Below, in pieces: positions 10,968 to 30,173 of a stretch of DNA of 64,000 nucleotides (position 1 is the first letter of the stretch; every line of letters begins with the position of its first letter). The translations under genes were made by a program, and so were the position numbers. Source of the stretch: Mytilus californianus (lineage: Eukaryota); the NCBI RefSeq assembly GCF_021869535.1, contig NW_026262734.1, positions 44,454,001 to 44,518,000 on the forward strand, given 5' to 3'. The notes beneath the pieces are model-generated. The model saw nothing but the letters and a program-made list of their open reading frames with translations. It searched no databases and was not told where the DNA came from.

Positions 10968-11150
10968 ATGTCGAGTAGGGGAGCTATCTATTTTATTTAT
11001 AAAGCTCACGAACGGATAAAACCTTTTGTTCATAGAACACCTATTATTACTAATTCGACCTTTAACAATTTAATTGGAAAAGAAGCCTTTTTTAAGTGTG
11101 AAAATTTGCAGAAAACTGGATCTTTTAAAGCTAGAGGAGCATTAAATACT
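10968..11150 (+). CDS. SRR: Serine/aspartate racemase family, exon 1 (MSSRG...HRTP...KCENLQKTGSFKARGALNT; PLP lysine)
   Basis: KxE.LQKTGSFKxRGA fold-type II PLP motif; ACT|gtaagt donor, 183 nt phase 0. Confidence 0.95.
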
Positions 11151-11976: not shown

Positions 11977-12018
11977 ATATTGAAACTCAAAGAGAGTAAT
12001 CCTAATTTAAAAGGAGTT
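11977..12018 (+). CDS. SRR: Racemase exon 2 (ILKLKESNPNLKGV)
   Basis: tttcag| and GTT|gtaagt; 42 nt, phase 0->0, fills the gap between GALNT and VAYSSGNHG. Confidence 0.9.
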
Positions 12019-12260: not shown

Positions 12261-12501
12261 ATGTTTGGTTTATAAAAAAAAAAAAAAAATCCAAGGCTTT
12301 ATGAAAGAATCCATGATAGTGTAACAAAGAAAACAAAGAACTGATTATTTGATATATAAACACGTATTATACCAATTTCTTTCCATAGAACAAGTGATAT
12401 TAGAATAAATGTTCTACTCAAGACAAAATGACCCGTAAATAAATAAAATAAAGATTTTTTTTTAAATGCCTGAAGCGTTAATTTTCAAACATCTTTTAAA
12501 G

Positions 12502-12668
12502 GTAGCGTACAGTAGTGGCAATCATGGTCTCGCTACAGCATGGGCATCTCGTTTGGCAGAGGTAAAGTGTTCGGTAGTTATTTCAAAAACGACATCTGAG
12601 TTCAAGGCCACAGCAATTCAAGGTTATGGAGCAGAAGTAGTAACATGTGAATATGATCCAATATCTAG
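12502..12668 (+). CDS. SRR: Racemase exon 3 (VAYSSGNHGLATAW...YGAEVVTCEYDPIS-R)
   Basis: SSGNHG motif with the racemase re-face Ser; ttttaaag| and AG|gtttgt; 167 nt phase 0->2. Confidence 0.93.
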
Positions 12669-12828
12669 GTTTGTTTTCTAGGACATATATGCTAGTATAC
12701 CGCATATGCATGTGTTTCCATTATATTTTGTTGCTGAATAAAAATTGAAAGTTCACAATAGGGACCTTGTCTAATGAAATAATGTATTTATTTTTGAAGA
12801 TAAGTTACATCGAACTTTTTACCTTCTA

Positions 12829-12954
12829 GAAGCAAGTTAAAGAAAGAGTAGATCTATCTTTATCTTTGGTGTCCTGTACTGACAGTTCATTGAAGTAAGT
12901 TAAAGAGAGAGTAGATCGATCTTTATCTTTGGTGTCCTGTACTCACAGTTCATT
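12829..12954. repeat. Tandem duplication, 63-bp period, 2 copies (a 21-bp duplication also at ~13018-13060)
   Basis: GTCCTGTACT at 12871 and 12934. Confidence 0.85.
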
Positions 12955-13714
12955 GGAATCATTTTGATTCATTATTAACAAGTGATTATTACAATTGGCG
13001 AGAAAATAAAAAAAACCAGTTGGTTCACATGGAAGTACAGTTGGTTCACATGGAAGTACAGATTTGCTGTTGAAAAAAATACGCGTATTGAATGAACTGA
13101 ATTACGTTGTCGATAAAAAAACAAGCATCGTTTCGAAAGTTTGTTATTCGATATGCATGAAATATTTGTTTCGCAGATGACCAAGAATATGTTCCACTTG
13201 TCACAGCCACGATCCTGTATTTTTGTTTATATAAACAAATGCGATTTGTCACTTGCAATGAACAGCACGACTATTGTTACTATTGAAACCGAACCGGAAC
13301 TGCATTCCCTTCCAGAGGACCCGAGTGGTTTTGATTGTTTCTTAGCAGTCAGTTATGGATTTTGGTTTTCCGTTATGTTCTGTCTTTCGGTTGTTAACAT
13401 TTCTACTTAAAATATTGGCTTTGTTACATTTAACTCATACATATATAGAAAATAAAGAGATGTGGTATGATTGCCAATGAAACAACTACAATGTATCCAC
13501 CAAGTTGAAATGAAGTGGATGTAAGTAAAATTATGTAACCGTACGGCCTCCAACAATGAATAAAACCCATACCGTATAGTGTGCTATAGTTGGTTTACGA
13601 AAGAATGTTTAGCTGAAAATAATAATAATAATTCATAATTGTTTTTATAAATCTACCTTTACTTAATTATAAGATTACTATACTATAGTTTTTAATTGAA
13701 TAAAACCTGAGTAG

Positions 13715-14012
13715 AAGACTAACAAAGGCTAGAGGTTCCTGACTTGGGACAGGCACAAAAATGCGGCGGGGTTTAACATGTTTTGTGAGATCTCAACCCT
13801 CCCTCATACCTCTAGCCATGCAATGTGGAATAAACAATAGCACAGCAAAAGCACAGTAAAACTCATTTTAAAAGAAGTCCGAGTTCGATGTAAGAATAGG
13901 TATCAGAAGAAACTAAACAAAATAACAATGATCGACACAAATTAACAAAGGATTACTAGCAGTTATATTACTGACATGCCAGCTCCAGACCTCGATTAAA
14001 TTGATCGAAAGA
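13715..14012 (-). repeat. Naiad family B 3'UTR fragment in racemase intron 3
   Basis: Matches 893-1180. Confidence 0.75.
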
Positions 14013-14021
14013 TTATAGATA

Positions 14022-14500
14022 TAAGAAGATGTGGTATGAGTGCCTATGAGACAACTCTCCATCAAAGTCACAATATGTAAAAGTAAACCATTATAAATCA
14101 AAGTACGGCCTTCAACACGGAGTCTTGGCTTACACCGAACAGCAAACTATAAAGGGCCCCAAAAATGACTAGTGTAAAACCATTCAAACAGGAAAACCAA
14201 CGGTCTAATCTATATAAAAAACGAGAAACAAGAAACACTTATGAACCACATCAACAAACGACAACCACTGAACATCAGGTTCCTGACTTAGGACAGATGC
14301 AAACAAATGCAGCGGGTTTAAACGTTTTAATAGGCGCTAACTTTCACCCTACCTGAAACAATAGTGTAACATAATAACATAGAAAGACACACTATAAAAT
14401 ATCAATTGAAATGGCTTAACTCAATCAAAATAACTCAATCAAAAGACATATTAACAAAAAAAAAGTGAACATACACTGAATGAATAAATTTGATCTATGA
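14022..14500 (-). repeat. High-copy short repeat (AAGAAGATGTGGTATGA(G/T)TGCCAATGAGACAACT family); further copies at ~2871-3060, 5808-5970, 13450-13590, 16220-16320, 18100-18220, 48680-48900, 63670-63800
   Basis: Many dispersed, related copies on both strands; the longest contains the CCTGACTTAGGACAG motif shared with Naiad 3'UTRs (strand inferred from that motif). Confidence 0.75.
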
Positions 14501-14951
14501 CACAATGTAAATACAAAATTAATAAAACAAGGGGGTTAGATGTTTAACAATATCAGAAAGACAACCATAACCTTGGACAAAATGCCGCCAAACAAAATAA
14601 CGTACACAGGTAAATAAAAATAATTTTGTTGTAAGGTATACATGGAGTACTGAAATAATTTTTACAAAATAAATAATTTTGTTGTTCCTAGTACGAGAAC
14701 AAAAGTGAAAATTTATCGTCATACTAAACACTTACCAAAGGTGGTATATATTAAAAATAGTGAGACTAGATATAACACTGAATAAGTAAACATTAAATAA
14801 CAAAAATACATTACAAATTGTATCAACAGGTCAAATTTACACGAAAGTACGATTTGAGAGTACTCGCAGTTTCTGAAAGCTACTTAAAAGTTAAAAACAG
14901 TTAATAATAAAAGCTCATGCATCAGAGACTAAACTCAACTAAAACACATCC

Positions 14952-15190
14952 ATTATGTCTTCATTATATGTAAATCAACCACAATTCCTCCCGTTATGGG
15001 TTTAGTATGATGCCATTATAAATTATACGAGAAGAACATAGCCCGTGTCATGCAAACAAATGGTTTTAGAATAAATTTACGAATGATGTCCTTGTACCGA
15101 TGATCAAATTTAGTAAACATTTTGACAAGTTTGTGATATCGAAAACCATGGTGTAATAGTTTTTCAGTAATCAGAGATTTCTTTTGTAAA
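14952..15190 (-). repeat. Naiad family B UTR/ORF-end fragments with an internal deletion
   Basis: Matches 1180-1300 joined to 1540-1650. Confidence 0.7.
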
Positions 15191-15633
15191 AATCATATAT
15201 TCGACAGTAACTATTATTTCTTTTGAAAATAGTGGATATCCACACACCTTTAAATGTTCACCATTTAATAAAAGCGCAATGCACAGTCCTGCAGTCCAAA
15301 TACGTGTTTAAGGAAGTTTGTTCCCTTTAAATGGTCAAACAAAGCTAAGATGGTTCTTATTAATTTATTAGTTGCAGTTGTGACAGGCCATCCTAGGCAT
15401 GAAAGGTCAATAATCGGACAGCTTGTTATTGCTTTTCGAAAAAATTGTTGAGGAAAAGTGTCATACAGAAGTTGGTTATGAACATACAAAGTTAATTAGC
15501 ACTGAATAAAATACGCCTTTCGATTATTTTTGCTAAAAAACTATTAACCTGTCTTAATTCTTATACCTTACATAAGAACTGGACAGTCATAACTATTAGA
15601 AATATTGTTTGAATTTTGTAAACCTTTTTTTAG

Positions 15634-15718
15634 AATAGAAGCCTGTGAAAAAATAGCAGCAAAAGAAGGATATGAAATTATCCATACTTCAGACCACGAT
15701 GACGTCATACATGGACAG
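15634..15718 (+). CDS. SRR: Racemase exon 4 (IEACEKIAAKEGYEIIHTSDHDDVIHGQ)
   Basis: tttttttag| and CAG|gtatat; 85 nt phase 2->0; aligns by eye to human MVHPNQEPAVIAGQ. Confidence 0.92.
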
Positions 15719-16649
15719 GTATATTATATACGTAAAAATACATACGAGATAACATGAAGTAGACAACCATCCAGTAGCACAAATACTGACATCAATATAT
15801 ATTGGTTGCCATATGTATACATATACGTATACATGTTATTTTCACCCACTGATCAGCTTATAGACGAATGTATCTCAACAGTAGATGACAATGTCAGCTA
15901 TGTTAACTTTATGGTTTTATTGTTTTCATTCAATTGCATTTTGTGAAAATGTTACTGTTTACAAAGAAGAACTAAAAATACATAGAATACCATAATATTG
16001 TTTTATAACTGGGGATATAAAGGTTGGGTTAGGGAAGATCTTCTTTGGCCCACAAATCACTAAGTGATACACAAGAAATGTATGTGTAAACCAACTGACC
16101 ATCCATGTTATTTGTCCAAGAATAAACCAATGGTTTTGAATTGTACTTTACAAAAATGATTCAAAGTTGTTTAAACGAATAAATTAAGTATATTTTAATC
16201 ATTTATGCAAACATATGAATGCACAAATAAAATACGGTGACCTATAGTTGTTAACATCTTTGTCATTTGGTCTCTGGTGGAGAGTTGTCTCATTGGCAAT
16301 CATACCACATCTCCTTATTTTGTATAGTATATATATTTCAATGATAGACAAGTGTATTTTCACAGGAATAAACCAATATAACTTGGAAGATATACCAATG
16401 TATGTGTACATGAATAATCCAAGTTATCTGCACACGCATAGACAAATGAATCTATAGTTATATTAATCGGCAAATCTGTACACCAATAATCTGTATACGT
16501 ATAATTTGGTGTTCATGTGCAATAACAAGATATTTGTTGTCATTTAACACTTATTTCTAACTTAAACGTTCTATTTGCAAATGTTAATCTTCAAACAAAT
16601 AAGACAGCTGAGGTCATGAAGACTGCTTTAACAAGTTTCAATCATTCAG

Positions 16650-16776
16650 GGAACAATCGCCGTGGAGTTATTACAGGAAGTGCCAGATTTAGATGCGATA
16701 TTGGTATCTGCAAGTGGAGGCGGAATGATTTCTGGTATAGCTATTGCCGCTAAATCTATCAACAAAAATATAAAAA
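16650..16776 (+). CDS. SRR: Racemase exon 5 (GTIAVELLQEVPDLDAILVSASGGGMISGIAIAAKSINKNIK)
   Basis: GGG phosphate-binding loop; cattcag| and A|gtaata; 127 nt phase 0->1. Confidence 0.93.
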
Positions 16777-17073
16777 GTAATATTTACCATTTGTTATATT
16801 TTCATTTGTGTGTTAAATCTCAACTATGTATATGTGAAAAAGTAGTAGATTTCCAGGCGACGGCAATCGAAAGTTTACTTTCACCTGAAATAAATTGCCT
16901 TTAACTAATTTGATAAAAAGGGATATTTTTAGCATCAATATTTTCGTTTATATATAATCTTTTTAATTGGAATGCAGATTAACTGTTTGTTTCAAAATTC
17001 AAAGAAACGTTAAAATTTCAGAATACAAAATAATACAATAGTAAAAAATGAAAACACTAGTTTTATATTTCAT

Positions 17074-17115
17074 GCATCCGAAGCGCTTTTCTGGATTTAC
17101 CTTCATCAGGAACGC
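17074..17115 (-). ncRNA. Minimal type I hammerhead ribozyme variant
   Basis: gcgttc-CUGAUGA-a gg taaat cc a-GAAA-agcgct-UC-ggatgc; palindromic stem III, weak stem II with an extra A. Confidence 0.6.
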
Positions 17116-17205
17116 TCAAAGCCGAATATTTGAAAGCCCCTGGCTGTAAGCAATCTTGGTGAGACAAACGATATAATGAATAAAATTATATGCTCTCCTT
17201 TTTAG

Positions 17206-17256
17206 TTTTTATGGTAGAACCTAAAGGTAAAATGGCTGAGAAGAGCCTAAGGTCAG
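17206..17256 (+). CDS. SRR: Racemase exon 6 (IFMVEPKGKMAEKSLRS-G)
   Basis: ctcctttttag| and G|gtaaat; 51 nt phase 1->1; VEP motif. Confidence 0.9.
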
Positions 17257-17888
17257 GTAAATATTTCTATTTAGTAATAGTAGCAATCGCTGACAACACA
17301 TCTTTAATTTATCTACTTATCCTGCCAGATCACCTGAGATCACCCTATGTTTTTTGGTAGGGTTCGTTCTGCACAGTCTTTTTGGGAACTTTTTTGAGTT
17401 TTCGTCGTCTTTCGTTTTTTGTCATGGCATTGTCAGTTTCTATAAGCTGAAAAGTTTTGAAATGGCCTTTGATATCCCTGCCTTTATTTCAATAAATAGC
17501 TGTTGAAAAACACGAAAACTAGTAATAATTATGATGACATTTTTTCAAGAACAAGAAAAGGTCTTCCATCTTCAAATTCTCAATTATTTATACTTTGTGT
17601 TTGAAATGCTGCGTGCTTCCTTTGGAATACAACCAAAGATGACGGACATAATCTGTCAACACTTAACTGGATACCCAAAATACTCAAACAACGATATGTT
17701 GCTCGGTCTGTCAAATGCTCCACAAAGCTTGTTTTCCCTTTGTATTACAGATAATAACATTTGTTTATTAGAAACCAAATTCAAGAGCGAACAAGGGTGA
17801 TCAGAAAAACATGACTGTACATTTAAAATTACATTTACACTGGATGGTCAAGCATATTTGTTATATGTAATTTATGCGTTTGTTTTAG

Positions 17889-18016
17889 GCAAAAGATGGT
17901 GGCCCAATCCTCCACAGTTTATAGATACTATTGCAGATGGACTAATGAGTCAACAATTAGGCATTCTTACATTCCCCATCATCTGTAGATTGGTAGAAAA
18001 AGAGGTTTTCACTGTT
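17889..18016 (+). CDS. SRR: Racemase exon 7 (GKRWWPNPPQFIDTIADGLMSQQLGILTFPIICRLVEKEVFTV)
   Basis: TIADGL motif; tgttttag| and GTT|gtaagt; 128 nt phase 1->0. Confidence 0.93.
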
Positions 18017-18468
18017 GTAAGTTTCGATATCAAAAGCTTGGAAAAAGCGAATGACAAAATTAAATTAACGTTAAGGTGTTTCTGGGATATAGAAATATAG
18101 TCATGGGTTTTGGTCACTGTTGAAGGCCGTACGGTGACCTATAGTTGTTTATTCTATATTATTTGGTCGCTGGTGGAAAGTTGTCTCATTGGCAATCTTA
18201 CCACATCTTCTTATTTTTATTCATCAGGACATCCGTCAGTAAAACTTATGCTAAAGAGTGGGATATGTATTGGTTGTACGGGATGTATATATACACAGCC
18301 ACGTGTGGTCGAAATTGGGAAGTTAAATATGATGTATCGCTTTAACTGTTCAATGTGAAATAACAAATCATCTGTATATTGATATATGTAATCTATTTTC
18401 GTGAATACTGCTTTCAATTAGAATAAGTCCACCAAACGTATAGGTTCTCTAGATAAAGAACATTAACT

Positions 18469-21071
18469 ATAATAAATAATAATAAATAATAAATAAATAA
18501 GCTTTATTTAGAGTCGGCAAGGTATACAAACAGAGACAACATAAGTTCTAATGAGCTTTTAACCGACATACAAGACATTTATAGCAATACAACATATAAC
18601 AATACAACACATAATACACATGGAATACATTACACAGCACAAAATGCTAAAAGCATGATGGTAATAAGCAGAATATAAGCATAAGCTAGGTATTAAAGCT
18701 AAAAGCATATAAGTGTAAACTAGGCATAAAAGCTGGTAAAATGCATAGCATAAAATGTTTTAAAGAAAAAAAGGGGGTATGATCCAATTGTTAAATAATT
18801 TTAGCATAATATATTAACTAAAAATCTGCACAAACTGTGCACTTACAGTCATTTCCATTCCACGACTTTAAAATATTTTTGAACTGGCTAAAATTAGCAA
18901 TTTTTCTAAAATCATCAGGTAGATCATTCCATAAAACAGCAGCTGTGTATTTAAAAGAGTTCTTACCATAGGTTGATGTTCGGACCCTAGGTATATCTAC
19001 AATATTAGAATATCTAAAATTATATTTACAATCTTTCAATACAACTAAATCATGTAAACATGGTGGTGACAATTTATATAAAAATTTAAAACATTCAATA
19101 GCCATGTTACGCATACGTCTTATTTTCAGTGATGGAACCTTTGCTCGTAAAAGTAGTTCATCATTTGACTACATGTAGCATAGTTTTTATATATGAATCG
19201 TAAAGCCCTTTCCTGATTTTTTTTCTTATTTAGTGGTGTTATTTTTGTTGCAAAAATGCCATGCCAAAGGACAAAAATTAAAATTAGATAAAATAAATGT
19301 GTGGAAAATGGTCAATTTATTTAATTTAGTAAAGTAGCAGCCAATGCGCTTTAAAACATTCAGTTGTTGAGATGCTTTACGACAAATATTTTTAATGTGG
19401 TGATTAAAATTAAGTTGATAGTCAATATCAATACCTAAAAGTTTGACAATCTCATCACAGGATATTTTTGCTGACTGTATATTAAAAACAGGCTTTTTTT
19501 GCAAATGTTTTATTTCCAACTGCAATGGCTTGGAATTTATCAGGATTTGCCTGCATACAATTAAATCTAAACCAGTCAATTAAAACAGCACTTTCTCTTT
19601 CAAGTGTACACAATAAATTTTCAAAATTGTTGTCAGCATATGACGGAGTATTATCATCAGCATAATTATACAGGGTACCATGTTCAATAAAATAGAATAT
19701 GTCATTTATAAAAATATTAAATAATAGGGATCCCAGGATTGAGCCTTGGGGTACCCCTTTCTGGATGTCAGCCCAACTGCTGAGTACTCCCTGAAGTTTG
19801 ATTTGTTGCCTACGATCTGTAAGATAATTTTGAAGTAATTTCACTAATTCAGAAGAAAGACCGTAGGCAGATAATTTACTTAAAAGAATATAATGTGGTA
19901 GACAGTCAAAAGCTTTCGAAAAATCCATAAGTATAGCTGCCACATACATATTTTTATCCAAAGCTGTTTTCCAATCTTCAAGGAGTCTAAGCAAAGTTGT
20001 CTGACATCCATGACCTTTTCTGAATGCACATAAAAAAGCATGAAATATATTTTCAAAAAATTCAGTCAACTGGTCAGACATAACCATTTCATATACTTTT
20101 GAAATTGTTGGTAAAATGCTCACAGGTCTATAGCTCTTTTTATCCTGTGGATCGTTCTTTTTGTGTAATGGTACAACCTGAGCTTCTTCAAGTATGTTTG
20201 GAAACTCACTGGATTCTATAGTGTTATTTATTAGTGTTGTTATGTGTTTGTTCAGTACTGGTGCACCAGCTCGTAATAGTTTCGATGATATCTGATCTAC
20301 TCCAGTAGCTTTTTTATATTTATCTTTTTCACCAGTTTGTCTACAGTGTCAACATGTATAGGTTTAAAATCAAAAAGTTTATCATGTTGTATGTTAGATT
20401 TAATTTTTAAAATACTAGGATGTGTTTTTTCTTCAAAAATAGTACCTTTGCCTATGTCATTGGTAACATTAACAAAACAGTATTAAAGTTGTCACAAACA
20501 TCTTTAGTGTCGTTTAAAATTTTATTTTCATCCACAAGTACAATTTTTTGTTGGCTTCAGGCAAACTTTTTAGATAAAAATGGCTTGACTGTGCTGTAAA
20601 AGAATTTTGATTTTTGTCCTCCAGCACATCTTTCTTGAAAATAAATTTCGCTGATTTTCTTTTTAATTTTGTAACCATATTTCTTTGTTTTCTATATGCT
20701 TCCCAAGTTTTGTTTGTTTTGTATTTTTCAAATTTTGTTCTCAGCATTTGTTTGTGAAAAATAGCTTTTCTTAGTTCTCTGTTCATATATGGTACCGAGT
20801 TTTTTTCGAGGGTATCTGTATTTCATTGGTGCATGACAGTTTATCACATCAGAGACTTTAGTTTCAAAATCATTATAATTATACCTAGTTTATATCATCT
20901 ATACATTCATCTGAATCATGTAAAAAAATTATATTATCAAGATCATTAATATAATTATCAACATTAAAAGTTTTAAAACTTCTATATTGTGTCTTGCTGT
21001 TTACACAATTAGGTGTATGACCTTTTATAAAAGTAGATATCATATGATGACAATCACTAACACCAGTGTTA
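18469..21071 (-). mobile_element. Older, frameshifted, 5'-truncated CR1/L2-group LINE (RT + 3'UTR + TTA/TTTA tail), 3' portion
   Basis: Broken ORFs 20514-20786, 19482-20123 (DFSKAFD, GVPQGS, YADD), 19226-19579, 18818-19114; 3' GTCGG...CCGAC stem, AATAAA and (TTA/TTTA)n tail at ~18470-18510. Confidence 0.9.
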
Positions 21072-21299
21072 TTACTACTCGTCGAACCCTTGAGTATGAA
21101 GGTGTGAAAATTTTGGGAGACTAAAAAGAGAGAAAAATTATATTTTCCAGTGTATTATGTTGAGATGTTTTCTGATTCTATATCAGAATAGACATTATGT
21201 GTGAAGCTGTTATAGTTTATTCGAATTTTGAGTGACCAAATAGTGACTTTTGCAAAGATTTTCGAAAGTGATTTTGAATTGGAGTTCACAACACACAAA

Positions 21300-22313
21300 A
21301 TGGCTGACCAGGTAACGAATGACAAACAACAACAACAATCAAACATAGACAGTTATTTTAAAAATACACCAAAACATAGTGGTAAAAGGTTACAACCATC
21401 CAGTAGTCCCGACAACTTATCTCCATCTATGCAACAAGTTGAAAAGGTAGCAAGAACAGCCAACCTTGATTCATCTCTCAGTGGCTCTATCGTTTCTGAA
21501 CATGACAGTTCTGAACAGATAATATCATCCATTGAAAATGAAACTGTATTTAAGCTATCGGATGTTGTTTGTGCTACGCTAAAAAATCAAGAGTTTTTGA
21601 ACTCCATCATTCCTCTCATCACTGAAAAAGTAATTGAAATGGTCAAACCTAAAATTGCACTGATCGTTGACGAATGTATTCAGCCTCACTTACTTACCAT
21701 TAAACACAATAAAGAAGCACTTATTTTGAAAGATATTGAACTTAACAATCAAAAAGAGCAAATAAATTCTTTAAACCGCAAATTAGACAAGATCGAAGCC
21801 AGAGTCGAGGAACAGGAACAGTATTCTCGAAGAACCAGTTTACGATTCCATAATGTTCCTGCACCAACTGACGACAAAGGCGATATTATCAAGCCTATAG
21901 ACACAGATTCCCTTATCCTTGGTATTTGCCATAAGCATTTGAAATTGAAGTTAGACACGAGAGATATTGGCAGATCCCATCCCATAGGTGAGATTAAAGA
22001 CGGGAAAATTTCTATCATTGTACGGTTCCTGTCGTATCGTCAAAGGCAGTTAGTTTTCAGCAATAAACGCAAATTGAAAGGAAACATAAACAAAACTTTC
22101 ATTGCTGAAAACCTTACAAAACACAGATACAATCTTTTGCACAGACTAAACACATTGCGTGAGAAAGGTCAAATAAATTCGTTTTGGACACATGACGGGT
22201 CAATATTGATTAAACAATCTGAGAATTCTCGTCCGAAAGTGGTAATTTCAAGGCAGGACATATATAAGCTTGGTGGGGAAGTCCTTGCAGGTGATGACCA
22301 GAAAGAGGATTAG
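21300..22313 (+). CDS. LINE ORF1p (coiled coil + RRM-type), 337 aa from the first true ATG
   Basis: EQEQYSRRTSLRFHNVP motif after a coiled coil, IIVRF and FIAENLT motifs; ATG at 21300 (the track starts 24 codons upstream at a non-ATG). Confidence 0.85.
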   Translation: MADQVTNDKQQQQSNIDSYFKNTPKHSGKRLQPSSSPDNLSPSMQQVEKVARTANLDSSLSGSIVSEHDSSEQIISSIENETVFKLSDVVCATLKNQEFLNSIIPLITEKVIEMVKPKIALIVDECIQPHLLTIKHNKEALILKDIELNNQKEQINSLNRKLDKIEARVEEQEQYSRRTSLRFHNVPAPTDDKGDIIKPIDTDSLILGICHKHLKLKLDTRDIGRSHPIGEIKDGKISIIVRFLSYRQRQLVFSNKRKLKGNINKTFIAENLTKHRYNLLHRLNTLREKGQINSFWTHDGSILIKQSENSRPKVVISRQDIYKLGGEVLAGDDQKED

Positions 22314-23035
22314 ACATTCCGTTTACATCATAGTCTTATGTCTTTTGACTTGCATTTGTTTAAATAACACAATTCTTAAATTGTTTTATCAATTTAATTA
22401 TATACACTTGTATATATATACTTGTTTTCTATGTATTGCTGTACTGAATATTTCTTTTTTCGATACACGTGTTAAGCAGCACGTGCCTGTGTTTGTTTAT
22501 TTATATTTCATTTATTTGCTATTTAAAACATGTGACATGAAATTATAACTCAACTCTTTACACCTGAGTGATTTAAAATCACTTACATACACGTGAACTT
22601 GTGTCGTTCCTGTAACTTTATCAATGATCGTTCTTCAAACGTTTTTATAGCTTACCTGTATTGATTAAATGAAAAGATAGATTACTCTATTTACCTATTT
22701 ACAACTTTTCACAAAAGAGCTTCCGTTTTAAAAAAAAAAACTTCAAATTTTGTTTTCTGATTTATTTGATTTATTTGTTTCCCCCCTAAAATGACATCGA
22801 AACTAAATTCATCTTAACTAAATTAATCTCTCTGATTTCACTACAACTGCATCGAACATTCTTATGATGTTCCAATTTTGCCTTTTGTACATAGATTTTT
22901 GTTTTCCCTTCTTTTTTATTTGCCTGAATTTCATGAATGATCATTCGAACTATATGTGTTTATATCTTGCATCATGTTTTACAAAGCAGTCCAATTTTCT
23001 GATTGTCATTTATATGTATTGTCTTGTATTTGACA

Positions 23036-26000
23036 ATGGGTAATGACATCGTAGCATATAGAATGACAATAGGACTGTTTTATCACAAGATAAGTCTGGG
23101 TTGTTTGAGAAAAACATTTGTATCGTTCTCAGTGTATGAGTTACTTGCCGTTTTATTTACGAATGTTTCAAGACTCAAACTATGTATTTTTAATTTATAC
23201 AGATCTTCTGCTAATATGATTTCATTTTACATACTGTTATTATGTTTGTTGCTAATATGTGGTGACATCGAACCGAACCCGGGTCCTGAGCGCACACCAG
23301 AAATATCTGAGAAAACATTGTCAATTTTCCATGGTAATATAAGAAGCCTTAGAAATAAACTGAATTATATTGTCGATATTATTGAAGATTACGATGTCGT
23401 ATTCTTGACAGAAACCCATTTAGACTCAAATATTACAGATTCTGATTTATATATATCCGGTTTTGAAATACCAGTTCGAAAAGATAGAAATTCTCATGGG
23501 GGTGGCATTATTATGTATTATAAAAGTTATGTTCGCATAACTCGTCGACATGATTTGGAGAATTGCCAACTTGAGAGTATGTGGTTTGAGTTAAAAACCA
23601 AATTGCGATCAATATTGATAAACATCAATTATAGGTCGGAACGGCAATCTTCACTTTATTTCTGGCAGTATTTGGATCAAATGTTGAAAAATGCCCTGGA
23701 TGAAAATAATTGCATAATTTGCTTAGGTGATCTGAATAAAAACTTTATGTCAGATCTACCGTCAAATATAAGAGATATTTTTTTCATCAATGGCCTTGTT
23801 AACATAATTGACAAAGCTACTCATTTTGACACACGAACAGGTAGCACGTCTTTACTTGATCCTATTTTAGTCACTGATTCGATACCGGTTTTAGATAAAG
23901 ACACAATACCTTTTGATAGAGGTATTAGTGATCATGATGGAACATACGTCACAATTGATTGTGGTTTTAGTAAAAGACGAACTTATAATAGATTGATATG
24001 GGATTATAAAAAAGGTGATTATGACCTAATGAAACAAAAAGTAGTTGAAACAAATTGGGAATATTTAATTTCTGATGCAAGTGACGTTCATGTTGCTGCG
24101 ACTAATTTCACGAATTCATTTCTTAATATAGCCTCCGAGTGTATACCTACAAGGGAAGTAACTATAAGATGTGACGATAAAGTTTGGTATGATTCGAATT
24201 TGCGGCATGAAACGAGAAAACGCGACAGGCTTCGTAATATTTTTATTCGCTCAAATAGTACATCCGCAGAAAAGAAATTTAAACAACAAAGGAACAAAGT
24301 AAATAACTTGAAAAAGCAAGCTAAAAAACATTTTTTTACCAGTATTAATGAAAATTTAGATGAACTAAAAGTTACAAACTGTAAACAGTACTGGAAAACG
24401 GTTAACATGTTAATTAAAAGTGATACACCGTCTCATGATTTACCACCAATGACGGACCCTGATCATAACTTTAAACTTGCGTATGAGGGAACCGAAAAGT
24501 CCGACATTTTAAATAAATATTTTTGTTCAATTTCTAATTTAGATGGCGCTAGTAAAGATTTGCCGGAATTTGAAGACCGATGTCTTGATTTTATTTCACA
24601 AATTGTAGTTAGTGAACAAGATGTACTTGATATTCTTTCAACGCTCGATGTTAATAAAGCTGTTGGACCAGATATCGTTAGCAACAGAATGTTACTTGCT
24701 GTTAGAAATGAAATTTCCAAACCATTATGTCTACTTTTTAACAAATCTTTAAATGATAAAATATTTCCAGACCAATGGAAGATTGCACATGTTATTCCCT
24801 TATTCAAAAGTGGTGACAAGTCATTACCGTCTAACTACAGGCCAGTCTCATTATTGTCATGTGTGAGTAAAGTCTTAGAAAAGATTGTTTTCAAAAATAT
24901 TTTTAACCATTTACATGAAAATAAACTATTATACAAGTATCAATCCGGATTTATTCCAGGATACTCAACTTCGCATCAGTTGATAGAATTGTATAACAAA
25001 ATTTTGAGTGCACTAAATGAAAAGCTTTTAACAAGCATTACATTTGCTGATATAAGCAAAGCATTTGATACTGTTTGGATTAAGGCTTTATTACATAAAC
25101 TTGAAAAATATGGTATAAAAGGAGACTTGCTATGTTGGTTGAAAAGTTACTTGTCTAGACGATCTCAGAGAGTTGTCATAAAAGATTCATTATCAAACAT
25201 TGGAAAACTTAACGCTGGTGTGCCCCAGGGGTCGGTATTAGGACCCTTGTTGTTTTTAATATACATTAATGATATAGCTGATGGTATGTCTGGATTCGGA
25301 AGGCTTTTTGCAGATGATACTTCAATAGGTCATACTGCACATGATGAATCCACTTTAAAAAGTTCGATCAGTAGAGATCTTGATTATTTAAGTAAGTGGT
25401 CAGAAAAATGGCTAGTGAAGTTTAATCCTAATAAAACTGATATTATGATATTCAGTTTGAAAAATATATACAGTGATATTACTTTTGATTTTGGTGGTGC
25501 TACATTGAAACCAGTTAGTGCGCACAAACATCTAGGTGTCATATTTAGTAATGATTGTAAATGGAATAAGCATGTTGATAAACTGATTGAGAAAACTTCG
25601 AAGCAGCTTAATGTTTTACGCAAACTAAAATATCGATTAAAAAGGGAATATTTGGAAAAAATTTATATGATATTTATTCGTCCGATACTTGAGTATTCAT
25701 CAGAAGTTTGGGATAATTGTGGGAACATAAATTCTGATCGGATAGAAAATATTCAAATCGAGGCTGCTCGCATTGTTACTGGATTACCAAGTTATGCTAG
25801 CCGAAACGCTATTTACAGGGAGACGGGATGGGAAAAATTAAGCGTAAGGCGGGAGGTAAAAAAGTTGGCCATGTTTTATAAAATTATTAACAATCAGGCT
25901 CCAGATTATCTACATGACTTGGTTCCAGAATTTGTATCTGATATTAGTAATTACAATTTACGAAACAGACACAATATCACTATTCCAGTGAATCGTTTGT

Positions 26001-26479
26001 CGGTTTATCAACATTCTTATTTCCCAGCATCCATAACATTGTGGAACACTTTAGATATTATTATTAGACAGATTCCTACATTTTCATTATTTAAAAGCAA
26101 ATTGCATATGTTATACTATAAGAATAAAAAATCTCCGAGACATTTTTACTCTGGAGATCGCTTACTATCTGTATTACATGCAAGGTTGCGAAACCATTGT
26201 AGCACTCTTCAATCAGATTTGTTTAATGCAAACTTAGTACAAGATGCCAATTGTTTATGTGGCTTCATCAATGAAGATGCTAAACATTATTTATTATATT
26301 GTAACAATTTTTCATCACAAAGGCTTTTAATGATAAATGAAATCAATGTTTTTGCTGTCAATATTACAATTGAGTTATTGCTCTCTGGTGATGAGTCTTT
26401 GAGTTCTGAAGAAAATTATAGTGTTTTTCTATCTGTACAAAAGTATATAAAAAGTACCAAGCGTTTTTCTCAACTTTGA
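23036..26479 (+). CDS. LINE ORF2p: 2A-like peptide + APE endonuclease + reverse transcriptase + C-terminal CCHC
   Basis: APE motifs (NIRS, LTETHL, GDLN, SDHD), RT motifs (NYRPVSLL, DISKAFD, GVPQGSVLGP, FADD), CLCGFINEDAKHYLLYC; no internal stop over 1147 codons. Confidence 0.95.
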   Translation: MGNDIVAYRMTIGLFYHKISLGCLRKTFVSFSVYELLAVLFTNVSRLKLCIFNLYRSSANMISFYILLLCLLLICGDIEPNPGPERTPEISEKTLSIFHGNIRSLRNKLNYIVDIIEDYDVVFLTETHLDSNITDSDLYISGFEIPVRKDRNSHGGGIIMYYKSYVRITRRHDLENCQLESMWFELKTKLRSILININYRSERQSSLYFWQYLDQMLKNALDENNCIICLGDLNKNFMSDLPSNIRDIFFINGLVNIIDKATHFDTRTGSTSLLDPILVTDSIPVLDKDTIPFDRGISDHDGTYVTIDCGFSKRRTYNRLIWDYKKGDYDLMKQKVVETNWEYLISDASDVHVAATNFTNSFLNIASECIPTREVTIRCDDKVWYDSNLRHETRKRDRLRNIFIRSNSTSAEKKFKQQRNKVNNLKKQAKKHFFTSINENLDELKVTNCKQYWKTVNMLIKSDTPSHDLPPMTDPDHNFKLAYEGTEKSDILNKYFCSISNLDGASKDLPEFEDRCLDFISQIVVSEQDVLDILSTLDVNKAVGPDIVSNRMLLAVRNEISKPLCLLFNKSLNDKIFPDQWKIAHVIPLFKSGDKSLPSNYRPVSLLSCVSKVLEKIVFKNIFNHLHENKLLYKYQSGFIPGYSTSHQLIELYNKILSALNEKLLTSITFADISKAFDTVWIKALLHKLEKYGIKGDLLCWLKSYLSRRSQRVVIKDSLSNIGKLNAGVPQGSVLGPLLFLIYINDIADGMSGFGRLFADDTSIGHTAHDESTLKSSISRDLDYLSKWSEKWLVKFNPNKTDIMIFSLKNIYSDITFDFGGATLKPVSAHKHLGVIFSNDCKWNKHVDKLIEKTSKQLNVLRKLKYRLKREYLEKIYMIFIRPILEYSSEVWDNCGNINSDRIENIQIEAARIVTGLPSYASRNAIYRETGWEKLSVRREVKKLAMFYKIINNQAPDYLHDLVPEFVSDISNYNLRNRHNITIPVNRLSVYQHSYFPASITLWNTLDIIIRQIPTFSLFKSKLHMLYYKNKKSPRHFYSGDRLLSVLHARLRNHCSTLQSDLFNANLVQDANCLCGFINEDAKHYLLYCNNFSSQRLLMINEINVFAVNITIELLLSGDESLSSEENYSVFLSVQKYIKSTKRFSQL
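23261..23287 (+). other. 2A-like translational StopGo motif GDIEPNPG|P
   Basis: Matches the D(V/I)ExNPGP consensus, preceded by LLLCLLLIC and immediately upstream of the APE domain. Confidence 0.85.
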
Positions 26480-27013
26480 CAACCTTATTCTGTAACAGAT
26501 CTTACTAGAACATGATCAATGTATGCTCTTAGGGGTACGATAATCGAATGATCTTTATGATTGACTTTTGTATTCTGAAACGTTTCCATGGATTTAAGTA
26601 AAAAACAAAATTGATACTTACAATTATGTGTAGATTTATTCCGTTTTCCTGTTAATCCGTAACTTTAAACTATGAGTGTGTAATTTACATTTAAACAAAT
26701 TTACTCACATGACTTGTCATGTACACTAACATATTTTATTTGACACAGCTCGGTGTGTTTGTATTTATTTCTACTGAAAATAGGCGCATTCGATTGGTTA
26801 TATTAAGTGGTAAATATCCATTGATTCGATTCTTAAAATTTGTATGTAACTTATTTTTATATCTTCATGCTAAAATAATAATTGGTTAAAGTCAGATTTA
26901 TGTAATGTTCATTCATGTGTATATTTATGTATATATTGGAGAAGACGTTACTAAGTTGAAAAACTTGTGTCTAATCCATTTGTCATTTTTGAACAATAAA
27001 ATATGTTTAAACT

Positions 27014-27060
27014 ACCAGTGTTAAAATTTAGTGTTTTGAAACAAAGAGTTGTTCTATTTG
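27014..27060 (-). mobile_element. 5' remnant of the same older LINE, split off by the intact LINE insertion
   Basis: Removing 21072-27013 and one TSD copy restores the frame TNRTTLCFKTLNFNTGVSDCHHMISTFIKG (APE C-terminal SD(x)H motif). Confidence 0.8.
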
Positions 27061-29308
27061 TAACTGTACTTGTTTTTAATATAATATTTTTTTCGTATTT
27101 AAAGATGTTAGCTGCTCTGTTTCAAAATAACACGCTTTTTAAATTACTGTTATAAAGTATAAGTATATAAATAACGGAACTTAAAAAGCAGAAAAACAAT
27201 GAAAGGTCCGAGACCTTGTTTTTGAAATATAAGCAATTCTAAATTTGGCGGGAAACGATTCTCTCTATATTTTCCATATATTTAATATTGGCACCTTTTT
27301 TCTTCCAGAAACTATGAAAAAATAACAAGGATGTTATAAGTTTTTTAAAAATGGCTTTTTAAACTATATGTAATAAAAGTATGAAAAGAAAAGTAGGGGC
27401 TAGCAGGAAAAAAATTGTATTGGCACTATATCGATAAAACTTAGAGAATTCCGAACATCTGACAAAAAGTCAAAACCAGTAACGAACATCCTTAATGATT
27501 ACTTCACGTTTCAAAGTATAAAAATAATTTAACAATTAAAGTGGACAATTTACTGAAAGGTAGTGTAAGGTCAGCGATACACCAAGAAGAATAAAAACTT
27601 ACAAACAATACCATTTACTAAAGAGAAAAGACACAAAACATTATTTAGAACACTAAATATTGGGTTGCAACCTTGCCAACTGTGTCAAGTAAGATGAATG
27701 CTTAAGAGTATAAAATAGTCGTGTTTCCGAAATAAGTGTTTTTTGTTTTTTTTTTTTTCTTAATAAGGATGATGAAATGCATGACATAAGGCTTTTTTCA
27801 TCCTTTTTTGTAATATTGTGACAAACCCACTATCTGGTTTTGAAAAAAATTGAAACAATGTTCTGAAGGATATTCATTATAATAAATGTAGATCATACAA
27901 AAATAATCATTTGATAAAATATAGACATTTCAACTTTTATATAATACTCTAAACTACATGATTAATTCATACAGAACAAATGGAGTCACATTGAAAAGGT
28001 GTATATTCGAATTCACTTATAGATGACATTTGCATAGTTTGAGTTTTTGCAATATTAAGATAAGATAAAAATTGCTATAGCGCTAAATTGGATTCAGAAT
28101 TATTCCCGTTTAGTCACAAATTATTGTTTGCAATTATAATTACACATTTTTACGTTTGAGATTGAACTGAACACAGACATTTTAGAGTAACCTATGAATA
28201 AAATAAGCAATTGAAATATGAAAATTATCACAAACAATACTGAAATAGGGTTAGAGGTAAAACGTCCAATGAAAGTATTTGTAAAATTTGCTATATTTTT
28301 TGAAGGATTTTGTAAAAGTTTCAATAGTATATTCATGCATGCTCCAACGTGTGTAAAAGTTCTTTGCACATGTAATAATTTATGTGCATTAAGTTCACTT
28401 TTAGTGTTAATGTTTGACGCGGTGGCAACTGACACCACATGTCTCTAAACTGGAAAAAAAAAAAACAAAAAAAAAAACACATGTTTTTTACAAATTATTC
28501 CGATTGTGTTTTGCTATTTCATAATGGCAAGAAGAGAGTAGAATTGAAAAATGCAGAAGACAAAAATAGAAGGTGTTTATTTATAGGAAACGAATACTTC
28601 TATATTTAGCACGAAGAACACTAAAACATCATTGCGAACAACAAATGCACTTGGCAATAGAAGTTTTAAGCAAACACACAGAGGCTTAGAAGATTTTAAG
28701 AGTTTAATATAAAAGTAACTAGATGGACTCTTTCAGATTTGCCTATATATAGATCGATTATGGAAGTTAAATGAAAAAGAGTTTAATTATATGACAATAA
28801 AAGTAGTAATATATAATAATGAAACTGTCAAATTGACACGAAAACTCCCCTATCATGCAGCGTAAAAGGTGCAAATTTATTACTGCATTTGAAAAGTCAT
28901 TATATGTGCATACAGCAAAAATGAGGCCAATGAGACTGTAACCAGATAACAAATACAATCGACATCGGGAGAATAACGTTAACATATTTTCCTCAAAAGT
29001 GAACCGATGTCTTTTACAATATTTCAAGCTTAGAATCGCACACAGATCAGTACAACGAAAACGAATGAAATATAATTGCAGAAAAGACCGGAATGGAAGT
29101 GAGCTTTCTTTTTCGTACCTCCCCCCCCCCCCCCCCAAAAAAAAAAAATAAGAAAAAACAAAAAATTACTCTTCACTGCACTTTGAGTTTACTTCTTTTC
29201 AACTGATAATCCACTTTATCACGAATATTCTAGGGCAATATGTTTACCTAATTTATTTCACTGGCACGGACTTACTTACTATCTAATCATATGGATTATT
29301 TTATTTAG

Positions 29309-29359
29309 GAAAATGAAGATATGATTAAGGGAATGGTGTTCTCTTTCCGGTATATGAAG
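29309..29359 (+). CDS. SRR: Racemase exon 8 (ENEDMIKGMVFSFRYMK)
   Basis: ttatttag| and AAG|gtaaac; 51 nt phase 0->0; aligns by eye to human TEDEIKCATQLVWERMK. Confidence 0.88.
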
Positions 29360-30029: not shown

Positions 30030-30173
30030 ATGGTAATAGAAGCCGCCGCTGGAGCTACAGTAGCTGCTGCCATGTCAGAGAAGTTAAAACAGATGGATCC
30101 TAGTATAAAGAAAATCGGAGTTATATTATGTGGTGGAAATGTTGACATGTTGAAATTACCATGGTACTCATAA
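30030..30173 (+). CDS. SRR: Racemase exon 9, terminal (MVIEAAAGATVAA...VILCGGNVDMLKLPWYS*)
   Basis: atttaag| acceptor, GGNVD motif, TAA at 30171-30173, AATAAA ~85 nt downstream; nine exons total 978 nt = 325 aa + stop with no frameshift. Confidence 0.94.
   Translation: MVIEAAAGATVAAAMSEKLKQMDPSIKKIGVILCGGNVDMLKLPWYS

What the first reader, a model, noticed from the sequence alone, without database searches (positions are those of the whole stretch)
15683..15691. Racemase with a non-canonical His-Thr-Ser specificity loop: possible aspartate (or other D-amino acid) racemase
Seen: the spliced 325-aa protein keeps the PLP Lys (SFK), the re-face Ser (SSGNH, not the dehydratase SAGNH) and the Arg in DPISR, but reads IIH-T-S-DHDD where mammalian serine racemase has MVH-P-N-QEPA. 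Known: in the animal SerR/AspR family this 'triple serine loop' sets substrate preference; AspRs carry Ser-Ser-Ser, and serines at the 2nd and 3rd positions convert mouse SerR toward AspR (Uda and colleagues). Inference: Thr-Ser puts hydroxyls at both key positions, so this may be an independently evolved or intermediate AspR, relevant to D-Asp in bivalves.
Basis: partly seen in the sequence, partly recalled or inferred. Interest (0 to 1): 0.72.

Follow-up and report, generated by a model that had tools for sequence, protein, structure and literature searches.

The report
Mussel racemase with aspartate-type loop
[quoted passage not shown] Its substrate loop (His-Thr-Ser-Asp) is one conservative change from the loop of a known coral aspartate racemase. 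That makes it a reasonable but untested candidate for making D-aspartate in Mytilus, and another case of a known evolutionary pattern.

Summary
Window 15683-15691 reads CAT ACT TCA (His148-Thr149-Ser150) in exon 4 of a nine-exon gene. Its product is XP_052074734.1, "probable serine racemase" of Mytilus californianus. Four of the eight splice junctions, including both that flank the loop exon, are seen in RNA data. All core catalytic residues are kept, and dN/dS among three Mytilus copies is 0.19-0.33.

The loop aligns with Ser157-Ser158-Ser159-Asp160 of the Anadara aspartate racemase (5YBW: 57% identity, TM 0.96). The wild-type Acropora aspartate racemase has His-Ser-Ser-Asp, so His-Thr-Ser-Asp differs from it only by Ser to Thr.

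Among 210 family members, HTSD occurs only in Mytilus. Related loops (PSSD, STSD, PTSD, HSSD, NSSD) recur in derived paralogues.

The genome has four family genes on one chromosome, with loops PPYD, HSAD, HTAD and HTSD. The last three form a mussel-specific clade beside the PPYD gene, separate from the oyster SSSD clade (AU p = 0.009).

The HTSD lineage evolved fastest. It also lost Gln89, which in human serine racemase couples ATP binding to activity.

Asp/Ser racemase activity is likely but unproven. This is a new member of a known kind, and interest is modest.

The parts
10968..11150 (+). Coding exon 1 (Met1-Thr61). It includes the PLP lysine K54 at 11127-11129, within SFKARG.
   Evidence: Exact spliced mapping of P0185. 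K54 is invariant in 203 of 204 family members.
11977..12018 (+). Coding exon 2 (Ile62-Val75).
   Evidence: AG acceptor and GT donor.
12502..12668 (+). Coding exon 3. It holds S79-S80-G81-N82-H83 (the re-face base S80 is at 12514-12516). It also holds the lineage-specific Ala77 and Tyr78 (12505-12510), Leu85 at the human Gln89 position (12529-12531), Ser103 (12583-12585), and the first two bases of Arg131.
   Evidence: The exon 3 to 4 junction is seen in RNA.
15634..15718 (+). Coding exon 4, which carries the specificity loop.
   Evidence: Transcript contigs cover 15631-15715 with 0 differences.
15683..15694 (+). Loop codons CAT ACT TCA GAC, coding for His148-Thr149-Ser150-Asp151. They align with human SerR H152-P153-N154-Q155 and Anadara AspR S157-S158-S159-D160.
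16650..16776 (+). Coding exon 5, with the phosphate-binding loop S181-G182-G183-G184-M185.
   Evidence: Junctions on both sides are seen in RNA.
17206..17256 (+). Coding exon 6, with Glu206 (human E210, a metal ligand).
17889..18016 (+). Coding exon 7.
18017..29308 (+). Intron 7 (11.3 kb), filled with retroelement ORFs. It does not disturb the reading frame.
29309..29359 (+). Coding exon 8 (Glu262-Lys278).
30030..30173 (+). Coding exon 9 with the stop codon. It holds Cys312, the partner of the PLP pyridine nitrogen, as C321 is in 5YBW.

Best explanation
The gene encodes a working fold-type II PLP enzyme of the animal serine/aspartate racemase family.

Origin (shown): it arose by duplication of the ancestral PPYD-type serine racemase gene inside the mussel lineage. 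The copies then diverged into HSAD, HTAD and HTSD loop types.

Activity (inferred): the HTSD copy is the only one of the four family genes in this genome that keeps hydroxyl side chains at loop positions 2 and 3, with Asp at position 4. Characterised aspartate racemases (HSSD in Acropora, SSSD in Crassostrea and Anadara) have this same pattern. I therefore think it most likely racemises L-aspartate, probably together with L-serine, and has little beta-elimination activity.

Mechanism (inferred from the family): Lys54 holds PLP and acts on one face of the substrate C-alpha. Ser80 acts on the other face. Arg131 binds the side-chain carboxylate. Thr149 and Ser150 sit over the external aldimine and set substrate preference.

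Regulation (inferred): Leu replaces the Gln89 gating residue, so activation by nucleotides is probably weak or lost.
For: Gene integrity and selection:
- The nine-exon ORF is intact and equals XP_052074734.1.
- It is spliced and expressed.
- dN/dS is 0.19-0.33 among three Mytilus copies, and the loop is invariant with synonymous changes.
- K54, S79, S80, N82, H83, Y117, R131, G182-184, E206 and C312 are all conserved.

Similarity to a solved aspartate racemase:
- The best solved relative is Anadara AspR 5YBW at 389.8 bits, against 228.9 for human SerR.
- The model has pLDDT 94 and matches 5YBW at TM 0.96, rmsd 1.0 A.

Loop evidence:
- HTSD aligns with S157-S158-S159-D160 of 5YBW.
- Wild-type Acropora AspR is H-S-S-D and C. 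gigas AspR is S-S-S-D. The loop lies just above the PLP imine. Ser at positions 153/154 and Asp at 155 favour racemisation over elimination (PMC6424897).
- Specificity of animal AspR is ascribed to these three residues (PMC11850409).
- Thr at position 2 occurs only in derived, AspR-like clades. One example is a C. virginica STSD protein that differs at only 9 residues from an SSSD copy.

Genomic context:
- The genome has no SSS-type gene. Its four family loci carry PPYD, HSAD, HTAD and HTSD.
- Gln89 is conserved in nucleotide-regulated enzymes, and Q89M and Q89A blunt ATP activation. This lineage has Leu there.
Against: - No enzyme with Thr at loop position 2 has been characterised in anything I could read. 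The beta-methyl group could hinder aspartate binding.
- The lineage changed several otherwise conserved residues next to the catalytic Ser loop: T77A, H78Y, Q85L and A157H. M. californianus alone also has P103S.
- The stem of this lineage evolved about five times faster at codon positions 1 and 2, relative to position 3, than its sister stem. This fits relaxed constraint or a shift to some other substrate as well as it fits an aspartate racemase.
- Mouse SerR with H-S-S-Q keeps strong serine racemisation. The loop alone therefore does not exclude a mainly serine enzyme.
- Expression is low in the sampled runs.
- I found no data on D-aspartate in Mytilus.
Confidence: 0.5

Rival explanations
1. 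It is a plain serine racemase/dehydratase, as the NCBI name suggests. The loop change only tunes racemisation against elimination of serine.
For: The re-face Ser and all other SerR residues are kept. Mouse H-S-S-Q and H-S-N-Q mutants are very active serine racemases. Thr at position 2 is untested.
Against: No canonical SerR in the 210-sequence census has Ser or Thr at position 2 together with Ser at position 3. These loops occur in derived paralogues that sit beside a retained PPYD or HPYD gene. The genome already keeps a slowly evolving PPYD gene (96-97% identity between species) that can supply SerR function.
Confidence: 0.25
2. It is a neofunctionalised racemase or lyase for another substrate (for example Glu, Asn, Thr or L-threo-hydroxyaspartate). 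The three derived mussel paralogues would then divide different D-amino acid tasks between them.
For: The stem branch is fast, and the lineage has changes beside the substrate-binding Ser loop and in the GQG helix. Family members have evolved Asp/Glu and Arg racemases through this same loop. The best bacterial family matches are hydroxyaspartate lyases, though below their cut-offs.
Against: Hydroxyls at positions 2 and 3 plus Asp at position 4 is the AspR pattern, and Arg131 for an acidic side chain is kept. Nothing points to one particular alternative substrate.
Confidence: 0.15
3. It is a decaying or functionless duplicate.
For: It is the fastest-evolving paralogue, shows a P103S change at a 94%-conserved proline in this species, and has low RNA depth.
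Against: The ORF and all GT-AG sites are intact, and the four junctions tested show correct splicing. dN/dS is well below 1, and every catalytic residue and the loop are conserved across three divergent copies.
Confidence: 0.05

Closest known systems
Anadara (Scapharca) broughtonii PLP-dependent aspartate racemase, PDB 5YBW
   Same: Same family and fold: 57% identity, TM 0.96, rmsd 1.0 A. It shares the Lys, the SSGNH motif, the Arg and the Cys at the pyridine nitrogen. Asp is at loop position 4 and Ser at position 3.
   Different: Its loop is S-S-S-D, against H-T-S-D here. Anadara keeps Thr-His before the Ser loop and keeps Gln89; this gene has Ala-Tyr and Leu. Anadara itself was not in my tree. 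The mussel clade is separate from the oyster SSSD clade there.
Acropora millepora aspartate racemase (wild-type loop H-S-S-D)
   Same: His at position 1, a hydroxyl at position 2, Ser at position 3 and Asp at position 4. It is a characterised AspR that also racemises Ser with little elimination (PMC6424897 Table 2).
   Different: Ser rather than Thr at position 2. It is a cnidarian enzyme of independent origin, and I did not retrieve its sequence here.
Crassostrea AspR-type genes (S-S-S-D, S-T-S-D)
   Same: Bivalve paralogues derived from a PPYD gene. Thr at position 2 occurs in a copy that differs at only 9 residues from an SSSD copy.
   Different: A separate duplication. One clade joining them with the mussel genes is rejected (AU p = 0.0087).
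Mammalian serine racemase (H-P-N-Q), PDB 3L6B
   Same: Same catalytic apparatus and fold, at 39% identity.
   Different: Pro-Asn at loop positions 2 and 3 and Gln at position 4. It has the Gln89 ATP gate and a strong dehydratase side reaction.
Mytilus PPYD paralogue (XP_052072601.1, C154:12.67 Mb)
   Same: Same nine-exon structure and same chromosome, 64% identity.
   Different: It has the ancestral P-P-Y-D loop, as in S. pombe SerR, and evolves slowly.

Membership tests
Serine/aspartate racemase family (fold-type II PLP, PF00291) | PLP-binding Lys in the S-F-K-x-R-G motif | tested here: met
   K54 in SFKARG. The column is invariant.
Serine/aspartate racemase family (fold-type II PLP, PF00291) | S-S-G-N-H loop with the re-face base Ser (human S84) | tested here: met
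   S79-S80-G81-N82-H83.
Serine/aspartate racemase family (fold-type II PLP, PF00291) | Arg equivalent to human R135 | tested here: met
   R131. Arg is present in 201 of 204 relatives; its role is described.
Serine/aspartate racemase family (fold-type II PLP, PF00291) | Full-length similarity and fold | tested here: met
   E = 8.9e-116 to 5YBW. Model pLDDT 94, TM 0.96. PF00291 is precomputed for this protein.
Aspartate racemase (functional class within the family) | Strict triple-serine loop S-S-S | tested here: not met
   The loop is H-T-S. The characterised Acropora AspR is H-S-S, so S-S-S is not strictly required.
Aspartate racemase (functional class within the family) | Hydroxyl residues at loop positions 2 and 3, and Asp at position 4 | tested here: met
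   Thr149, Ser150 and Asp151. Whether Thr is equivalent to Ser is not known.
Aspartate racemase (functional class within the family) | Measured racemisation of aspartate | not testable with these tools
   This needs a recombinant enzyme assay.
Canonical serine racemase | Loop of the form (H/P)-P-(Y/F/N) | tested here: not met
   Pro at position 2 and an aromatic residue or Asn at position 3 are both absent.
Nucleotide-activated SerR-type enzymes | Gln at the human Q89 gate | tested here: not met
   Leu85 in all three HTSD-type proteins. Gln is present in paralogues B, C and D; its role is described.
Bacterial threo-3-hydroxy-L-aspartate ammonia-lyase (NF005454) | Score above the curated cut-off | tested here: not met
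   287.9 bits against a cut-off of 452.

The most novel reading that the evidence does not exclude
After a private duplication, mussels built a three-gene set of derived racemases (HTSD, HSAD, HTAD). The HTSD enzyme would be a nucleotide-insensitive racemase whose main substrate is neither serine nor aspartate, or a new Thr-based solution for aspartate with distinct kinetics.
Probability: 0.15. Interest if true: 0.55.

Novelty: new member of a known kind. Interest (0 to 1): 0.32.

Why it matters
If the enzyme racemises aspartate, it would name the source of D-aspartate in Mytilus, a major ecological and aquaculture genus. It would add another independent origin to the known parallel evolution of aspartate racemases. 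It would also show that Thr can replace the second Ser of the loop.

The set of four paralogues in one genome (PPYD, HSAD, HTAD, HTSD) is a natural mutational series for testing how loop positions 2 and 3 set specificity. The Gln89-to-Leu change offers a natural test of the proposed ATP gate.

Tried and rejected
- The spliced protein had no reference at first, so I searched by exons. The 28-aa loop exon alone gave only a weak 5YBW hit (E = 0.18). The exon 3 search of protein representatives returned mostly fragments. It did lead to full-length relatives and then to the window's own protein, P0185.
- The papers by Uda and Moe 2022, Wang 2011 (Aplysia DAR1) and Mizobuchi 2017 (5YBW) are not held. 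Loop data for characterised enzymes therefore come from two open papers, a review and a 2025 study.
- Literature searches for aspartate racemase or D-aspartate in Mytilus gave nothing useful.
- I asked whether the C. virginica X1 and X2 proteins (STSD and SSSD) use alternative loop exons. This is rejected, because the nine differences are scattered along the protein.
- A scan for columns that separate derived-loop from canonical-loop proteins was confounded by taxonomy and gave no clear second determinant.
- More distant PLP loci on C143, C1 and C88 are only 30-50% identical over parts of the protein. They are not family members.
- The organism of the NSSD relative P0270 (transcript contigs ERZ27229299 and ERR3342472) could not be named.

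Full report
**Observation.** Window 15680-15700 reads ATC CAT ACT TCA GAC CAC GAT, which codes for Ile-His-Thr-Ser-Asp-His-Asp. The reported codons are therefore real and sit at the stated coordinates. They lie in exon 4 of a plus-strand gene.

I rebuilt the gene by exact spliced mapping. It has nine coding exons: 10968-11150, 11977-12018, 12502-12668, 15634-15718, 16650-16776, 17206-17256, 17889-18016, 29309-29359 and 30030-30173. All have AG/GT borders, and the coding sequence is 978 nt with the stop.

The translation is identical to P0185. This is XP_052074734.1, "probable serine racemase [Mytilus californianus]", on a contig of 115,541,503 bases. The window's own contig has the same length. 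The 11.3-kb intron 7 is full of retroelement ORFs but leaves the frame untouched.

**Expression.** I laid one raw stranded RNA-seq run and three contig sets on 12400-18100. They show GT..AG joints at 12668|15634, 15718|16650, 16776|17206 and 17256|17889.
- Depth is confined to the exons, apart from repeats in the introns.
- Transcript contigs cover 15631-15715 and 15660-15715 without a single difference.
- Reads lie with the first mate on the minus strand, as expected for a plus-strand mRNA in a usual stranded library.
- Depth is low, so the gene is expressed weakly in these samples.
- The junctions of exons 1-2, 2-3, 7-8 and 8-9 lay outside the laid stretch. One 523-nt contig runs 157 nt beyond exon 7, which would fit exons 8 and 9.

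**Family and catalytic residues.** The whole protein matches the Anadara broughtonii aspartate racemase 5YBW at E = 8.9e-116 (389.8 bits). Dictyostelium SerR gives 257 bits and human SerR gives 229 bits. An AlphaFold model built from a 42-sequence alignment has mean pLDDT 94.2. It superposes on 5YBW at TM 0.96, rmsd 1.0 A and 57% identity, and on human SerR at TM 0.91.

I aligned 210 family members. The protein keeps:
- Lys54 (human K56);
- Ser79, Ser80, Gly81, Asn82 and His83 (human S83-H87, including the re-face base S84);
- Tyr117 and Arg131 (human R135);
- Gly182-184 and Glu206 (human E210);
- Cys312, the partner of the pyridine nitrogen, as C321 is in 5YBW.

**The loop.** HMMER aligns His148-Thr149-Ser150-Asp151 with human H152-P153-N154-Q155 and with Anadara S157-S158-S159-D160.

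The open review PMC6424897 places this loop just above the PLP imine. Its Table 2 lists these wild-type loops:

| Enzyme | Loop |
|---|---|
| Human and mouse SerR | H-P-N-Q |
| S. pombe SerR | P-P-Y-D |
| Crassostrea gigas AspR | S-S-S-D |
| Acropora millepora AspR | H-S-S-D |

The review also says that Ser at positions 153 and 154 raises racemisation, and that Ser at 152 or Asp at 155 lowers beta-elimination. PMC11850409 states that substrate specificity of animal AspR is controlled by the three residues of this region. It also says that AspR activity arose independently several times, and it calls His-Pro-Tyr-Asp a typical SerR sequence.

The premise that AspRs carry Ser-Ser-Ser is therefore too narrow. 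The window's loop differs from that of a characterised AspR only by Ser to Thr at position 2.

**How common is HTS?** In the census, canonical loops dominate: PPYD 58, HPYD 33, PPFD 28, with smaller numbers of PPYN, HPFD and KPYD.
- HTSD occurs three times, and only in Mytilus (californianus, edulis, galloprovincialis).
- Close variants recur: SSSD 9, PSSD 9, HSSD 2 (crayfish), STSD 2, PTSD 1 (Pinctada), NSSD, QSSD, STCD and SSCD.
- Thr at position 2 is found only in such derived loops.
- A C. virginica STSD protein differs at only 9 of 326 residues from an SSSD copy. Ser/Thr exchange at this position is therefore tolerated in an AspR-type background.

**Paralogues.** Exon-wise searches of the 1.65-Gb genome find four family loci, all on contig C154. 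All four have the same nine-exon structure and an intact frame.

| Gene | Protein | Position on C154 | Loop |
|---|---|---|---|
| A (this gene) | XP_052074734.1 | 44.46 Mb | HTSD |
| B | XP_052075596.1 | 45.06-45.08 Mb | HSAD |
| C | XP_052074140.1 | 43.23-43.25 Mb, minus strand | HTAD, one residue shorter after the loop |
| D | XP_052072601.1 | 12.67-12.69 Mb | PPYD |

Other hits, on C143, C1 and C88, are distant PLP enzymes. There is no SSS-type gene. A is the only copy with hydroxyls at both key positions.

**Phylogeny.** I built a careful IQ-TREE tree of 89 proteins (LG+C20 PMSF). The bootstrap had not fully settled (correlation 0.973). It gives (Mytilus PPYD, (P0270 NSSD, ((B, C), A x3))), with support 100/98, 100/99 and 100/90.

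Oysters have their own PPYD group and their own derived group (PSSD, PTAD, SSSD, STSD), placed beside it with weak support (57/97). Heterodont clams also carry derived-loop genes.

Forcing the mussel and oyster derived genes into one clade costs 35 log-likelihood units (AU p = 0.0087). Two caveats apply:
- I named the group after seeing the tree.
- Gene conversion between paralogues could mimic lineage-specific clustering.

With those caveats, an independent origin in the mussel lineage is supported. This is the pattern already described as frequent parallel evolution of AspR. By parsimony, with NSSD as the outgroup, Ser at position 3 is ancestral in the mussel derived clade. It was lost to Ala in B and C and kept in A. 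Thr at position 2 is derived.

**Selection.** Pairwise dN/dS between the A-type coding sequences of three species is 0.19-0.33. The loop codons are conserved, with synonymous TCA/TCT and GAC/GAT differences.
- On a fixed tree, the stem of the A lineage has a ratio of 0.37 for codon positions 1+2 against position 3. The B/C stem has 0.075.
- Between M. californianus and the other species, A is 90% identical, B and C about 92%, and D 96-97%.

A is therefore under purifying selection, but it is the fastest-evolving copy and changed quickly after the duplication.

The A lineage departs from highly conserved columns at four places: Thr77 to Ala, His78 to Tyr, Ala157 to His, and Gln85 to Leu (the human Q89 position). 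Pro103 to Ser occurs in M. californianus alone and is confirmed in transcripts.

The review reports three things about Q89:
- It is conserved in nucleotide-regulated enzymes.
- It is replaced by Ala or Met in enzymes that ATP does not regulate.
- Q89M and Q89A reduce ATP activation.

This predicts weak or absent nucleotide activation in the A-type enzyme.

**Interpretation.**

*Shown:*
- the gene, its splicing and its expression;
- family membership and intact catalytic residues;
- the alignment of the loop and its conservation;
- the set of paralogues and their mussel-specific origin.

*Inferred:* substrate preference. The best reading (about 0.5) is an Asp/Ser racemase with little dehydratase activity. 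The rivals are:
- a mainly serine enzyme (0.25);
- another substrate (0.15);
- a decaying copy (0.05).

The gene is already annotated, and the evolutionary pattern is already published. I therefore class it as a new member of a known kind. Thr at loop position 2, the natural series of four paralogues and the loss of the Gln89 gate make it a good but not surprising target for an enzyme assay.

Noticed in passing
G000:C154:45064457-45082416 (+), 43234825-43251930 (-) and 12673291-12693421 (+): Three intact paralogues lie on the same chromosome with the same nine-exon structure. Their loops are HSAD, HTAD (one residue shorter after the loop) and the ancestral PPYD. The Ala at position 3 of the first two matches no characterised loop I could find.
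   Followed up: partly
window 12505-12510, 12529-12531 and 15710-15712: The HTSD lineage alone replaces Thr-His before the catalytic Ser loop with Ala-Tyr. It also replaces the ATP-gate Gln (human Q89) with Leu, and the Ala of VIAGQG with His.
   Followed up: partly
P0184 (M. edulis) against P0193 (M. galloprovincialis); loci L025 and L026: The HTSD-type proteins of these two sister species are only 90% identical (dS 0.16). Their B-type and D-type proteins are 99% identical. The two HTSD genes may be different copies or very divergent haplotypes.
   Followed up: no
window 13444-13487, 14015-14117, 16257-16321 and 18118-18220: A short dispersed repeat (core GGTGGAGAGTTGTCTCATTGGCAATCATACCACATCTCC) sits in introns in both orientations. 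It has very high RNA depth (up to about 32,000 summed word depth), evidently from copies elsewhere in the genome.
   Followed up: partly
window 18818-26476: Intron 7 holds three sets of retroelement ORFs. There are reverse-transcriptase fragments on the minus strand (about 18818-20123). A 361-aa ORF lies on the plus strand at 21228-22313.
   Followed up: no
window 12829-12954: A tandem duplication of a 63-nt unit (94% identical) lies in intron 3.
   Followed up: no
P0303 and P0306 (Crassostrea virginica): Two AspR-type proteins labelled isoforms X2 and X1 differ at nine scattered residues, including loop position 2 (SSSD against STSD). They are near-identical gene copies or alleles, not alternative exons.
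   Followed up: partly
L027:116-1105 (P0270; ENA ERZ27229299 and Logan ERR3342472): An unnamed transcript encodes an NSSD-loop protein that branches at the base of the Mytilus derived clade. Its organism is not known.
   Followed up: no
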